Part shown: positions 35,501 through 38,500 of the stretch, one piece after another
How positions within the stretch are numbered: the first letter of the stretch is position 1
Layout: every line of letters begins with the position of its first letter
Source of the DNA: Octopus sinensis
Taxonomy: Eukaryota
NCBI RefSeq assembly: GCF_006345805.1
Contig: NC_043021.1
Location: 14,260,001-14,324,000 of the forward strand
Direction: 5' to 3'
Length of the DNA stretch: 64,000 nucleotides
Notes under the pieces: model-generated
What the model was told of the DNA's origin: nothing
Database searches by the model: none
Seen by the model: only the letters and a program-made list of their open reading frames with translations
Made by a program: the position numbers and the translations under genes

Positions 35501-38500
35501 GGGATAACATTTCAATAAGGTCCCACAGAAAAGGGATAACATTTCAACAAGGTCCCACAGAAAAGGGATAACATTTCAACAAGGTCTCACAGAAAAGGGA
35601 TAACATTTCAACGAGGTCCCACAGAAAAGGGATAACATTTCAATAAGGTCCCACAGAAAAGACTAACATTTCAATGACGTCCAAGAGAAAGGGTTAACAT
35701 TAGGGTGATGATAAATGGTACAACTAATGGTGATGACAGAGGTTGGGGGGCATAGTACGGTAATGATAGAATGAATGAGTGATTGTAAAAAAAAAAAAAA
35801 AAAGTGGTAAGTTGGAAGGTAGAAAAGGGTTACATTTAAAATGAAGTCAAACTAAGAACAGTCATCAACCAAAGTAGATCACCCCACACATGCACAGGGT
35901 AACCGGTCGGAACAATTTTAAGATTATAATTTGTAATCTGTGACAAAGGTGAGGGTCCACATTTAAGCTTCACCATTATGTCATGGTGTAATGTTGTGAT
36001 TCCATAAGCAGAGGTTGAAAAAAACCAACCAATCTGATAGATGTACTGGGAGGTGGTGGTAGTGCCTTGATGAATCAGCAAATAAATGAGAGGAAGAGAT
36101 AAATAGAGTGTGAGAGAGAAAGGGGAGGGAAAATAGAGATAGAGGGTGAGAGAGGAGGTAGAGAGAATAGATAGATGGTGAGAGAGATGAGAGATAGATG
36201 ATAAGAGAGAGACTGTAATACTGACCACCAATAGCCAAATATCGGAAGAACAACCATCCTGTGATGAGAGATTCTTTGGCACTCCTTGGAGGTTTTTTCA
36301 TAATTTCAAGATCTGGAGGGTTGAAGCCCAAGGCGGTGGCAGGAAGACCATCAGTTACCAAGTTGACCCACAGAAGTTGTACAGGGATCAAAGCTTCAGG
36401 GATACCGAGAGCAGCAGTTAAGAAAATACTGGAGAAAAGAAAAAATAAAATAAAGTATGCAAAAAGAAAAAAAAAAGAAAAGAGACAAGTTATGTAAGTT
36501 TTAATGAATGTTAATTAAGGAAGACAAGACTAAATGCTGTTTACCCCATTTTTTAAACTGCTTCTTTGTTTCATTGTATAAGCTAACGGTAGGTTAATGA
36601 ATGAATACATGAGTTGACAACAGCCAGTTTGGCTCAGGAAAAAACAGGAGTCAGCGAGGATACCTCTATATGGTCATTTAATCTGCTAGAAAATAACTCA
36701 GATCTTGGCCTGGCTCTGTGTTGGTTACAATGATGAGTGCTTCTGTTGATACAATCATCATCATCATTTAGCGTCCGTTCTCCATGCTAGCATGGGTTGG
36801 ACGGTTCAACTGGGGTCTGGGGAGCCCGAAGGCTGCACCAGGCCAGTCAGATCTGGCAGTGTTTCTACAGCTGGATGCCCTTCCTAACGCCAACCACTCC
36901 GAGAGTGGAACAATTGCCTTGTGAAATTTAAGTGCAAGTGGCTGAGTACTCCACAGACATGCGTACACTCAATGTAGTTTTCAGTGAGATTCAGCATGAC
37001 ACAGAAAGTGACAAGGCTGTCCTTTTTGAATTTCAGGTACAACTCATTTTTTCCAGTTGAGTGAACTGGAGCAATGAGAAATAAAGTGTCTTGCTCAAGG
37101 ACACAATGTATCACAGTGAATCAAACACACAACTTTATGATTAGGAGCTGATTACCCTAACCACTAAGCCACGCACCTCTGCAACTCAAATCCTAAGCTT
37201 ACACTAGCTGGCATGAAAAGAGAGGAATAAAACACCATTGTGTGTAAGATGTGACCTGGGGCTAAACAGCTACAAATGAAAGATCCATCATGAAATCAAT
37301 GTGAGGAAGCAGAATCAATCCTTACCAAACAACTTCACCAACGTTGGAAGAGATCAAATATCTGATGAATTGTTTCATGTTGTTGTAAATGGCACGGCCT
37401 TCCTCTACGGCAGACACAATGGTTGAGAAGTTGTCATCAGCCAAAACCATCTGTAAGCTACAGTCAAGGAAGTTAGAGGAACAAAAACATGAGGAGAAAG
37501 CAAGGAAGAGAAAGAACGAGACAGAGAGTGTAAGGGGGGAAATGATGTAATTGGTAGCTGTATGGGGGCATGCGTAGTAACAATGTGTCGTTGCATCAAC
37601 CATTTGTTGGTGACCCCCTACTCTTGGTGGATGACACTTTTGCACCACTCGGGCAAAAATCCTCCAATCCATGGACCTGTTTGGTATTAAGTGTTGCTGG
37701 TGAGAGTTTTACAGGGGGTGTAATTTCTCCATTAATCAATTAAAATCTTGTTGGAAACAGCTGTAGTGGATTGACATTATCCATCTGTTGTTGTTATATA
37801 TATATATATATGTATGTATCATCATCATCCTCATTTAGCGTCCGCTTTCCATGCTAGCATGGGTTGGACGGTTCAACTGGGGTCTGGGAAGCCAGAAGGC
37901 TGCACCAAGCCCAGTCTGATCTGGCAATGTTTCTACGGCTGGATGCCCTTCCTAACGCCAACCACTCCGTGAGTATAGTGGGTGCTTTTTACGTGCCAGA
38001 CGGGGCTGGTAACAGCCACGTTCGGATGGTTCGCTTACGTGCCACCGGCACTGGTATCACAACTATATGTATGTGTATATATATATATATATATATATAT
38101 ATATATATATATATATATATACACACGAACACACATACACACTTACATAGTAGTAATAAGGAGGTGTGCACTGCACTAATGTGTCACTGCATCCACCATT
38201 TGTTGGTGGTTCCTTACTCCTGGCAGACAACACCTTTGCACCACTCGGGCAACAACACTCCAACCCATGGGTCTGTTTGGGTAGTCATTGCTGATGAGGG
38301 TTTAACACAGGTCTGTTCAAATCATCGAGTGATCAATAGCAAATAAAAAAAAACAAAAACAAACAAAGGATATCGGCAGCAGACTTGGCAACAGCAGTTC
38401 CGGAACCCATGGCAATACCAATTTCAGCCTTTTTCAAAGCAGGAGCATCATTCACACCATCACCAGTCTGGGTAAAAGAGAGAGAGAATAGAATTATATT

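What the first reader, a model, noticed from the sequence alone, without database searches (positions are those of the whole stretch)
37453..38373. AT-AC minor-spliceosome (U12) intron in the P-domain of SERCA
Seen: after ...KSAA the exon has no GT donor. Instead the pre-mRNA reads GCCG|ATATCCTTTG, the U12 5' consensus. It ends TTCCTTGAC-TGTAGCTTAC|AGATG, a U12 branch point followed by a terminal AC. Only this pairing gives the in-frame A-E-M-V-L-A-D-D. Established: U12 introns are rare and are spliced by U11/U12/U4atac/U6atac, often slowly. From memory, this region is one 221-nt exon in vertebrate ATP2A genes, and here 94+127=221. Inference: this is an ancestral U12 intron lost in vertebrates or a lineage-specific one. 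It would put the main ER Ca2+ pump under minor-spliceosome control. GT-AG-only predictors would mis-model it.
Basis: partly seen in the sequence, partly recalled or inferred. Interest (0 to 1): 0.85.

Follow-up and report, generated by a model that had tools for sequence, protein, structure and literature searches.

The report
U12 (AT-AC) intron in octopus SERCA
The octopus gene for the main ER calcium pump (SERCA) really does contain one rare minor-spliceosome (AT-AC) intron; it is shared by all mollusc classes tested and is an ordinary member of a known intron class, but it repeatedly trips up gene predictors.

Summary
On the minus strand, a 921-nt intron (38373..37453) begins ATATCCTTT. It carries TTCCTTGAC with the branch A 11 nt before a terminal AC. 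It splits a 94+127 = 221-nt coding block. Of 19 introns in this SERCA gene it is the only one with U12 signals; the other 18 are GT-AG. Only these boundaries give ...AKSAA|EMVLADD...

The resulting protein is 884/884 identical to Octopus sinensis RefSeq XP_029650916.1, so the junction is already annotated.

The same AT-AC intron, at the same site and phase, is present in genomic DNA of Argonauta, a chiton and a gastropod. Read-through 'DIL' in mis-modelled protein models points to it in two unionid bivalves and another gastropod. It is absent from Lingula, Capitella, Lineus, Tachypleus, an acoel, a shark fragment and a GC-rich vertebrate-like contig.

Unidentified non-mollusc metagenome contigs carry a GT-AG U12-type intron at the identical site. 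This favours an old intron lost many times over a mollusc-specific gain, but does not prove it.

Five public gene models, including O. vulgaris, mis-model the site. No RNA from this species was available, and regulatory significance is untested. It is a routine new member of a known class; interest is low to moderate.

The parts
38374..38467 (-). Upstream coding exon (94 nt), [31 protein letters not shown] plus the first base (G) of the Glu codon. It is preceded by a normal GT-AG intron (…CCCAG|ACT).
37453..38373 (-). U12-type AT-AC intron, 921 nt, phase 1.
   Evidence: orthologous introns
38365..38373 (-). 5' splice site ATATCCTTT, a 9/9 match to the U12 consensus RTATCCTTT.
37463..37471 (-). 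Branch-point sequence TTCCTTGAC (TCCTTRAC, 0 mismatches). The predicted branch A is at 37464, followed by 11 nt to the intron end.
37453..37454 (-). Terminal AC of the intron. The CAG ending 2 nt downstream (37451) would shift the frame if used with this donor.
37326..37452 (-). Downstream coding exon (127 nt), (G)AG ATG … = [42 protein letters not shown]. It is followed by a GTAAG donor.
17586..54383 (-). The part of the SERCA gene held in the window (residues 108-991 of XP_029650916.1), about 21 exons. The 18 other modelled junctions are all GT-AG.
37554..38280 (.). Intron interior. Two 131-nt direct repeats (37554-37684 and 38150-38280, 76% identical) flank a segment bordered by (TA)n tracts (37789-37826 and 38064-38129). 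This looks like repeat-derived filler and is not conserved in the orthologous introns.

Best explanation
Window 37453..38373 (minus strand) is a constitutive U12-type (minor-class) AT-AC intron. It sits in phase 1, inside the Glu codon of the conserved AKSAA-E-MVLADD block of the P-domain of the SERCA gene of Octopus sinensis or a near-identical relative.

By the established mechanism for this class, the U11/U12 di-snRNP recognises the 5' site ATATCCTTT and the branch site TTCCTTGAC together. U6atac then replaces U11, and the 3' site is chosen by its short distance (11 nt) from the branch A. This mechanism is inferred from the sequence, not shown here. Excision joins 38374 to 37452.

The intron dates at least to the last common ancestor of molluscs. 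It is probably older and was lost by precise deletion in many other animal lineages.
For: 1) Signals. The 5' site matches 9/9 and the branch site 8/8, with the branch A 11 nt from the AC. The other 18 introns of the gene have at least 3 mismatches at the 5' site and at least 2 at the branch site, and all are GT-AG.

2) Boundaries. Only these boundaries reproduce the conserved peptide. All 9 in-frame GT/GC-AG alternatives delete or insert residues.

3) Product. The spliced model is 884/884 identical to O. sinensis XP_029650916.1 (P0368), which reads AKSAAEMVLADD. Transcript-sized contigs of other cephalopods read the same. The exon joins of one of them (L003) coincide with the window model, including 38374|37452.

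4) Conservation. The orthologous intron in Argonauta hians (605 nt), the chiton Liolophura sinensis (273 nt) and the gastropod Batillaria attramentaria (535 nt) shows little else in common at its two ends and differs in length. Each still keeps G|ATATCCTTT, a U12 branch motif (TTCTTTAAC, ACCTTAAC, TTCCTTGAC) and YAC|AGATGG about 10-11 nt later.

5) 'DIL' read-through. This is G|AT ATC CTN translated. It appears after AKSA[AS] in mis-modelled proteins of Potamilus, Sinanodonta and Bulinus.

6) Outside molluscs. Six metagenome contigs (L008, L010-L014) carry G|GTATCCTTTTG at the same nucleotide. In the five that reach the 3' end it closes with GAACCTTAAC (GAGCCTTAAC in L014) followed by about 10 nt and AG|AAATGG. 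L016 carries G|ATATCCTTTC at the same nucleotide.

7) Octopus sinensis is a species with documented minor introns (PMC10639083).
Against: No RNA-seq or cDNA from this species could be examined, so the junction rests on protein identity with a RefSeq model and on relatives' transcripts.

Dependence on U11/U12/U4atac/U6atac is inferred from sequence only. intronIC could not be run.

An AG lies 2 nt downstream of the AC, so some AT-AG (frame-shifting) use cannot be excluded.

For the age of the intron: the non-mollusc contigs are taxonomically unidentified, and their position relative to Bilateria is unresolved (28/100 bootstrap). The intron is absent from every named non-mollusc genome examined: Lingula, Capitella, Lineus, Tachypleus and Convolutriloba.
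Confidence: 0.92

Rival explanations
1. The intron is an AT-AC intron removed by the major (U2-type) spliceosome, as with the rare U2-type AT-AC introns.
For: The terminal dinucleotides alone do not decide the class (established knowledge; restated in PMC7367187).
Against: U2-type AT-AC introns have a U1-like 5' site (ATAAGT-like) and a polypyrimidine tract (my own knowledge). Here the 5' site is ATATCCTTT, and a perfect U12 branch motif lies 11 nt from the 3' end. Both are conserved across four mollusc classes.
Confidence: 0.03
2. The true boundaries are GT-AG or GC-AG. One candidate is CAA|GTCTGC…CTGTAG|CTT (38384/37458), as in O. vulgaris CAI9740860.1. Another is GCT|GCCGAT…TTACAG|ATG (38377/37451). 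On this reading the U12-like motifs are coincidental.
For: These pairings are in frame, and one is used in a deposited O. vulgaris protein model.
Against: They replace KSAAE by NLQ, or delete AE, in a block found in nearly all of the 120 full-length SERCAs inspected; the exceptions are the mis-modelled ones and one with D for E. Their donors are poor matches to the GT/GC consensus. The RefSeq O. sinensis model and all cephalopod transcripts read AKSA[AS]EMVLADD. The U12 motifs are conserved in orthologues.
Confidence: 0.02
3. Evolutionary rival. The intron is a lineage-specific U12 intron gained in the mollusc stem lineage. The U12-type intron at the same site in the unidentified metagenome lineages would then be an independent gain, or those contigs would be unrecognised relatives.
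For: Every named non-mollusc genome examined lacks the intron, including the minor-intron-rich Lingula and a horseshoe crab (PMC10639083). The metagenome contigs could not be assigned to a taxon.
Against: Gain of minor introns, and parallel gain at one site, are considered very rare in animals (PMC10639083). The metagenome GT-AG-type contigs never fall inside molluscs (0/100 bootstraps). They also lack the AM|TGDG intron found in octopus, Argonauta, the chiton, Batillaria, Lingula, Lineus, Tachypleus and the vertebrate fragments. L016 has no mollusc among its best matches.
Confidence: 0.25

Closest known systems
U12-type (minor-class) AT-AC introns, e.g. those of vertebrate voltage-gated Na+ and Ca2+ channel genes (SCN, CACNA1) and P120/NOP2
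   Same: It has the ATATCCTTT 5' site, a TCCTTRAC branch site about 11 nt from the 3' end, a terminal AC and a non-zero phase. It is a single such intron in a gene otherwise full of GT-AG introns, and its splice signals are deeply conserved while the lengths differ and the sequence next to the signals does not.
   Different: The host gene is different. The searched literature holds no description of a minor intron in SERCA/ATP2A. The vertebrate-type genomic fragments examined (shark P0062, contig L001) have no intron at this site.
GT-AG subtype U12 intron at the same SERCA codon in metagenome contigs L008 and L010-L014
   Same: It has the identical insertion point (after the G of the Glu codon) and phase, with RTATCCTTT and CCTTAAC motifs. 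Where the 3' end is in the contig, the branch-to-3' distance is also the same.
   Different: The termini are GT-AG rather than AT-AC, the usual subtype switch within this class. The organism is unknown, and the SERCA sequence is only about 80% identical over conserved columns.
RefSeq model XP_029650916.1 / XP_029650915.1 (Octopus sinensis SERCA isoforms X1/X2)
   Same: The protein is identical to the window's spliced model over residues 108-991, so the same AT-AC junction is already used in the public annotation.
   Different: The annotation does not label the intron class. The sibling O. vulgaris model CAI9740860.1 uses a wrong GT-AG pair.

Membership tests
U12-type (minor spliceosome) intron | 5' splice site consensus RTATCCTT(T) starting at intron position +1 | tested here: met
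   ATATCCTTT, 0 of 9 mismatches. The other 18 introns have 3-6 mismatches.
U12-type (minor spliceosome) intron | Branch-point sequence TCCTTRAY close to the 3' splice site (about 10-15 nt) | tested here: met
   TTCCTTGAC at 37471-37463, with the branch A 11 nt from the intron end. The other introns have at least 2 mismatches, and only two of those weaker matches lie 10-15 nt from the 3' end.
U12-type (minor spliceosome) intron | Terminal dinucleotides AT-AC or GT-AG | tested here: met
   AT…AC in octopus, Argonauta, the chiton and Batillaria. GT…AG at the same site in metagenome contigs.
U12-type (minor spliceosome) intron | No extended polypyrimidine tract between branch site and 3' splice site | tested here: inconclusive
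   The pyrimidine fraction at -25..-4 is 0.68, against 0.55-0.95 for the GT-AG introns. The branch motif itself fills this space, so the measure does not discriminate.
U12-type (minor spliceosome) intron | Precise excision at these boundaries in mRNA | tested here: inconclusive
   This is supported indirectly. The model is 884/884 identical to the RefSeq O. sinensis protein. Relatives' transcripts read AKSA[AS]EMVLADD, and the joins of L003 coincide with the model. No RNA from this species was available.
U12-type (minor spliceosome) intron | Conservation of the U12 signals in orthologous introns | tested here: met
   Argonauta, Liolophura and Batillaria genomic DNA. 'DIL' read-through in Potamilus, Sinanodonta and Bulinus models.
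U12-type (minor spliceosome) intron | Splicing depends on U11, U12, U4atac and U6atac snRNPs | not testable with these tools
   This needs knockdown or inhibition experiments. No snRNA gene lies in the window (Rfam scan found no family at gathering score).
U12-type (minor spliceosome) intron | High intronIC / U12DB-type PWM score | not tested
   intronIC and its matrices were not available. Consensus mismatch counts were used instead.
U2-type AT-AC intron (major spliceosome) | U1-compatible 5' site (ATAAGT-like) and a polypyrimidine tract, without a U12 branch motif | tested here: not met
   The 5' site is ATATCCTTT and a perfect U12 branch motif is present.

The most novel reading that the evidence does not exclude
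The intron may be a genuine U12-type intron gain in the mollusc stem lineage. On this reading a second, independent U12 insertion occurred at exactly the same nucleotide in another lineage. That would make this site a rare documented case of minor-intron gain, or parallel gain, in animals. A milder variant: it is an ancient metazoan minor intron that molluscs alone among the sampled bilaterian phyla retained, because minor-spliceosome-limited splicing tunes SERCA output.
Probability: 0.2. Interest if true: 0.55.

Novelty: new member of a known kind. Interest (0 to 1): 0.3.

Why it matters
Biologically this is one more minor intron in a genome that has many. SERCA mRNA in molluscs cannot be made without the minor spliceosome, but nothing here shows that this is used for regulation.

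Two things give it modest value.

(1) Evolution. The intron is fixed in the four mollusc classes sampled, cleanly absent from the five other animal phyla sampled, and present as the GT-AG subtype at the identical nucleotide in an unidentified non-mollusc lineage. That makes it a tidy test case for minor-intron retention, loss and subtype switching.

(2) Annotation. At least five deposited SERCA protein models are wrong at this site because the predictor would not use AT-AC. They are Octopus vulgaris CAI9740860.1, Batillaria attramentaria, Potamilus streckersoni, Sinanodonta woodiana and Bulinus truncatus. The read-through tripeptide D-I-L after AKSA[AS] is a simple diagnostic.

Tried and rejected
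- Same-species transcript evidence. The first two protein searches returned only short targets; the tool appears to list targets up to about 1.75 times the query length. They therefore missed the full-length proteins. The third search and a cluster look-up found the RefSeq protein but no 100%-identical transcript contig.
- Two contig look-ups were wasted on non-longest isoforms (Tachypleus X2 and Watersipora X3).
- Literature. Five searches for a minor intron in SERCA/ATP2A/Ca2+-ATPase found nothing relevant. The one recurring hit cites SERCA2 only in its reference list. IAOD covers 24 genomes and its paper mentions no mollusc. The supplements of the two large minor-intron surveys were not held, or held nothing useful. 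My recollection that the Artemia SERCA gene might have an AT-AC intron could not be checked and is not used.
- Taxonomic identification of the metagenome contigs. The sample identifier is not in the paper library and the locus list gives no taxonomy. An NJ tree puts them outside the named bilaterians, but with only 28/100 bootstrap support. My guess that the Ga01263xx samples are coral metagenomes is memory only and is not relied on.
- Two of the nine pattern hits (L009, L015) are other P-type ATPases in which GATATCCTT is coding sequence, not an intron. They were rejected.
- The Rfam scan of the window found nothing, so no snRNA or intronic ncRNA is involved.
- Chance. ATATCCTT alone is not significant in the window (6 copies against 3.4 expected), so the argument was not built on motif counts.

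Full report
**1. What is in the sequence**

The gene lies on the minus strand. Reading it and cutting it by script gives the following layout:
- an exon at 38467..38374 (94 nt);
- an intron at 38373..37453 (921 nt), beginning ATATCCTTTG and ending …CTAACTTCCTTGACTGTAGCTTAC;
- an exon at 37452..37326 (127 nt).

The two exons total 221 nt. They translate to [73 protein letters not shown]. The Glu codon is split G|AG, so the intron is in phase 1. Every coordinate and string in the finding is correct.

**2. Gene context and internal control**

The same mapping was later obtained with the Argonauta protein P0241.

For each of the 19 junctions I enumerated GT-AG, GC-AG and AT-AC pairings that keep the frame, and scored the resulting peptide against the query. 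Eighteen junctions are best explained by GT-AG, mostly GTAAG donors with pyrimidine-rich acceptors. Only the junction at residues 730/731 needs AT-AC.

A consensus count shows this intron has 0/9 mismatches to RTATCCTTT. It has 0/8 mismatches to TCCTTRAC, with the branch A (37464) followed by 11 nt. The other introns have 3-6 mismatches at the 5' site and 2-4 at the branch site, and only two of those weaker branch matches lie 10-15 nt from the 3' end.

An explicit list of in-frame GT/GC-AG alternatives around this junction has nine entries. All remove 2-14 or add 6-8 residues.

The octamer ATATCCTT by itself is not unusual: 6 copies against 3.4 expected. The case rests on its exact position, its pairing with the branch site and the AC, and conservation.

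**3. Whose gene it is, and whether the junction is used**

The spliced model is 884/884 identical to residues 108-991 of Octopus sinensis XP_029650916.1 (P0368, isoform X1). The single apparent mismatch is my read-through of the first, split codon. The window is therefore O. sinensis or a near-identical relative, and the RefSeq protein already contains AKSAAEMVLADD. That means RefSeq already uses the 38374|37452 join.

Transcript-sized contigs from other cephalopods (P0242-P0245, P0361, P0366, P0367, P0370-P0373) also read AKSA[AS]EMVLADD. One of them, L003, aligns to the window exon by exon, with its block ends at or within a few bases of my boundaries, including this junction.

No RNA of the same species was reachable, so direct junction evidence is still missing.

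**4. Orthologues**

| Source | Taxon | State at this site |
|---|---|---|
| Argonauta hians | cephalopod | AT-AC intron, 605 nt: G\|ATATCCTTTATT … TTCTTTAACTAACTTAC\|AGATGG |
| Liolophura sinensis | chiton | AT-AC intron, 273 nt: G\|ATATCCTTTTGT … AACCTTAACTGCTGTGTAC\|AGATGG |
| Batillaria attramentaria | gastropod | AT-AC intron, 535 nt: G\|ATATCCTTTTGC … TTCCTTGACAGTGCTGCAC\|AGATGG |
| Potamilus streckersoni, Sinanodonta woodiana | unionid bivalves | protein model continues D-I-L after AKSAS (the translation of G\|AT ATC CTN) |
| Bulinus truncatus | gastropod | protein model continues D-I-L after AKSAA |
| Lingula anatina | brachiopod | uninterrupted |
| Capitella teleta | annelid | uninterrupted |
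| Lineus longissimus | nemertean | uninterrupted |
| Tachypleus | horseshoe crab | uninterrupted |
| Convolutriloba | acoel | uninterrupted |
| P0062 | shark fragment | uninterrupted |
| L001 | contig of 63% G+C, vertebrate-type flanks | uninterrupted: …ITAM\|gtgagt…ctgcag\|ACAGGC…GTTTG\|gtgagt, 221 nt |

In the three mollusc genomes with DNA in hand, only the splice signals are visibly shared at the intron ends, and the lengths differ. The Batillaria model (P0256) also shows the D-I-L read-through.

Many further unnamed single-exon ORFs of the form Q|TGDG…GEVV|W show that the undivided 221-nt exon is widespread.

**5. Beyond molluscs**

One scan of metagenome contigs was run for GGNACNNNNGTNGCNAARNNNGCNNNNGRTATCCTT, which is GT.VAK.A. 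followed by G|RTATCCTT. It gave nine hits.
- Two (L009, L015) are other P-type ATPases in which GATATCCTT simply encodes D-I-L of 'DILLLDDNF'. They are not introns.
- Six (L008, L010-L014) are SERCA genes of at least three related organisms with TCTG|GTATCCTTTTG at the same nucleotide and phase. In the five that reach the 3' end the intron closes with GAACCTTAAC (GAGCCTTAAC in L014), about 10 nt and AG|AAATGG. This is a textbook GT-AG U12-type intron.
- One (L016) has TCAG|ATATCCTTTC at the same place, and the contig ends inside the intron.

The six contigs lack the AM|TGDG intron that the other animals checked (except Capitella and the acoel) share. They are about 80% identical to animal SERCAs over 298 conserved columns. 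In NJ trees they never fall inside molluscs (0/100), but their position outside Bilateria is weakly supported (28/100). L016 has no mollusc among its best matches. Their organisms could not be named.

**6. Interpretation**

The mechanism is the standard one for the class and is established knowledge, not tested here. U11/U12 recognises the 5' site and branch site cooperatively. U6atac pairs with the 5' site, and the 3' site is chosen by proximity to the branch point. A phase other than 0 fits the known bias of U12 introns (PMC7367187).

On history, the intron was present in the last common ancestor of chitons, gastropods, bivalves and cephalopods. There are two ways to account for the wider pattern. 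One is that it is older and was lost precisely at least four times: in acoels, in vertebrates, in the arthropod line, and in the annelid/brachiopod/nemertean line(s). The other is that it was gained twice at one nucleotide. Minor-intron gain and parallel gain are regarded as very rare (PMC10639083), so I favour ancient origin at roughly 3:1. This rests on unidentified contigs.

**7. Known or new**

The searchable library holds no paper describing a minor intron in a SERCA gene. IAOD covers 24 genomes and its paper mentions no mollusc. Larue and Roy (PMC10639083) analysed more than 3000 genomes, including O. sinensis, and note relative minor-intron enrichment in molluscs. This intron is therefore almost certainly in their bulk tables, though I could not check. 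The junction itself is in RefSeq.

It is thus a new, so far undiscussed, member of a well-known class, not a new kind of thing.

**8. Practical consequence**

Octopus vulgaris CAI9740860.1 reads [14 protein letters not shown]. That is exactly the GT-AG alternative 38384/37458. Four other mollusc models read into the intron.

**9. Verdict**

The regulatory implication is untested. Novelty and interest are low to moderate.

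Noticed in passing
window 30828-30961 and 28164-28297 (minus strand): There is a tandem pair of 134-nt exons (65% nt identity) encoding THH.QCPA…[16 protein letters not shown]. Each has AG/GT splice sites, and 134 is not a multiple of 3, so they must be mutually exclusive. RefSeq isoforms X1 and X2 of O. sinensis differ by exactly this exon. The pair is also present in Argonauta, the chiton, Batillaria, Lingula and Lineus, but single in Tachypleus.
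   Followed up: partly
window 37554-38280 (inside the U12 intron): Two 131-nt direct repeats (76% identical) flank a roughly 270-nt segment bordered by (TA)n microsatellites. This looks like an inserted repetitive element. It accounts for much of the octopus intron's extra length compared with the chiton (273 nt).
   Followed up: partly
public proteins P0363 (O. vulgaris CAI9740860.1), P0256 (Batillaria), P0277 (Potamilus), P0279 (Sinanodonta), P0352 (Bulinus): These deposited SERCA models are wrong at this junction. The O. vulgaris model has KSAAE replaced by NLQ.
   Followed up: yes
L009 4470 region and L015 2440 region (metagenome contigs): In other P-type ATPases the homologous codons are literally GAT ATC CTT (D-I-L of DILLLDDNF), starting at the same nucleotide where the SERCA intron's ATATCCTT starts. 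This is probably a by-product of the search pattern, but it is a curious overlap between a coding motif of paralogues and the U12 5' site.
   Followed up: no
window, minus strand: 23192-23199, 41505-41512, 41683-41690, 42370-42377: Five of the six ATATCCTT octamers in the window lie on the gene's sense strand. Four of them are inside other (GT-AG) introns of SERCA. The total is not significant (6 against 3.4 expected), and none sits at an exon boundary.
   Followed up: no
window 60001-62000: This region has unusually strong GC skew (+0.44) and AT skew (+0.29) compared with the rest of the window. It was not examined.
   Followed up: no
L008, L010-L014 (metagenome SERCA contigs): These genes lack the intron between …EISAM and TGDGV… that octopus, Argonauta, chiton, Batillaria, Lingula, Lineus, Tachypleus and vertebrate-type fragments share. 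They keep the intron after …GEVV. Their organisms are unidentified.
   Followed up: partly
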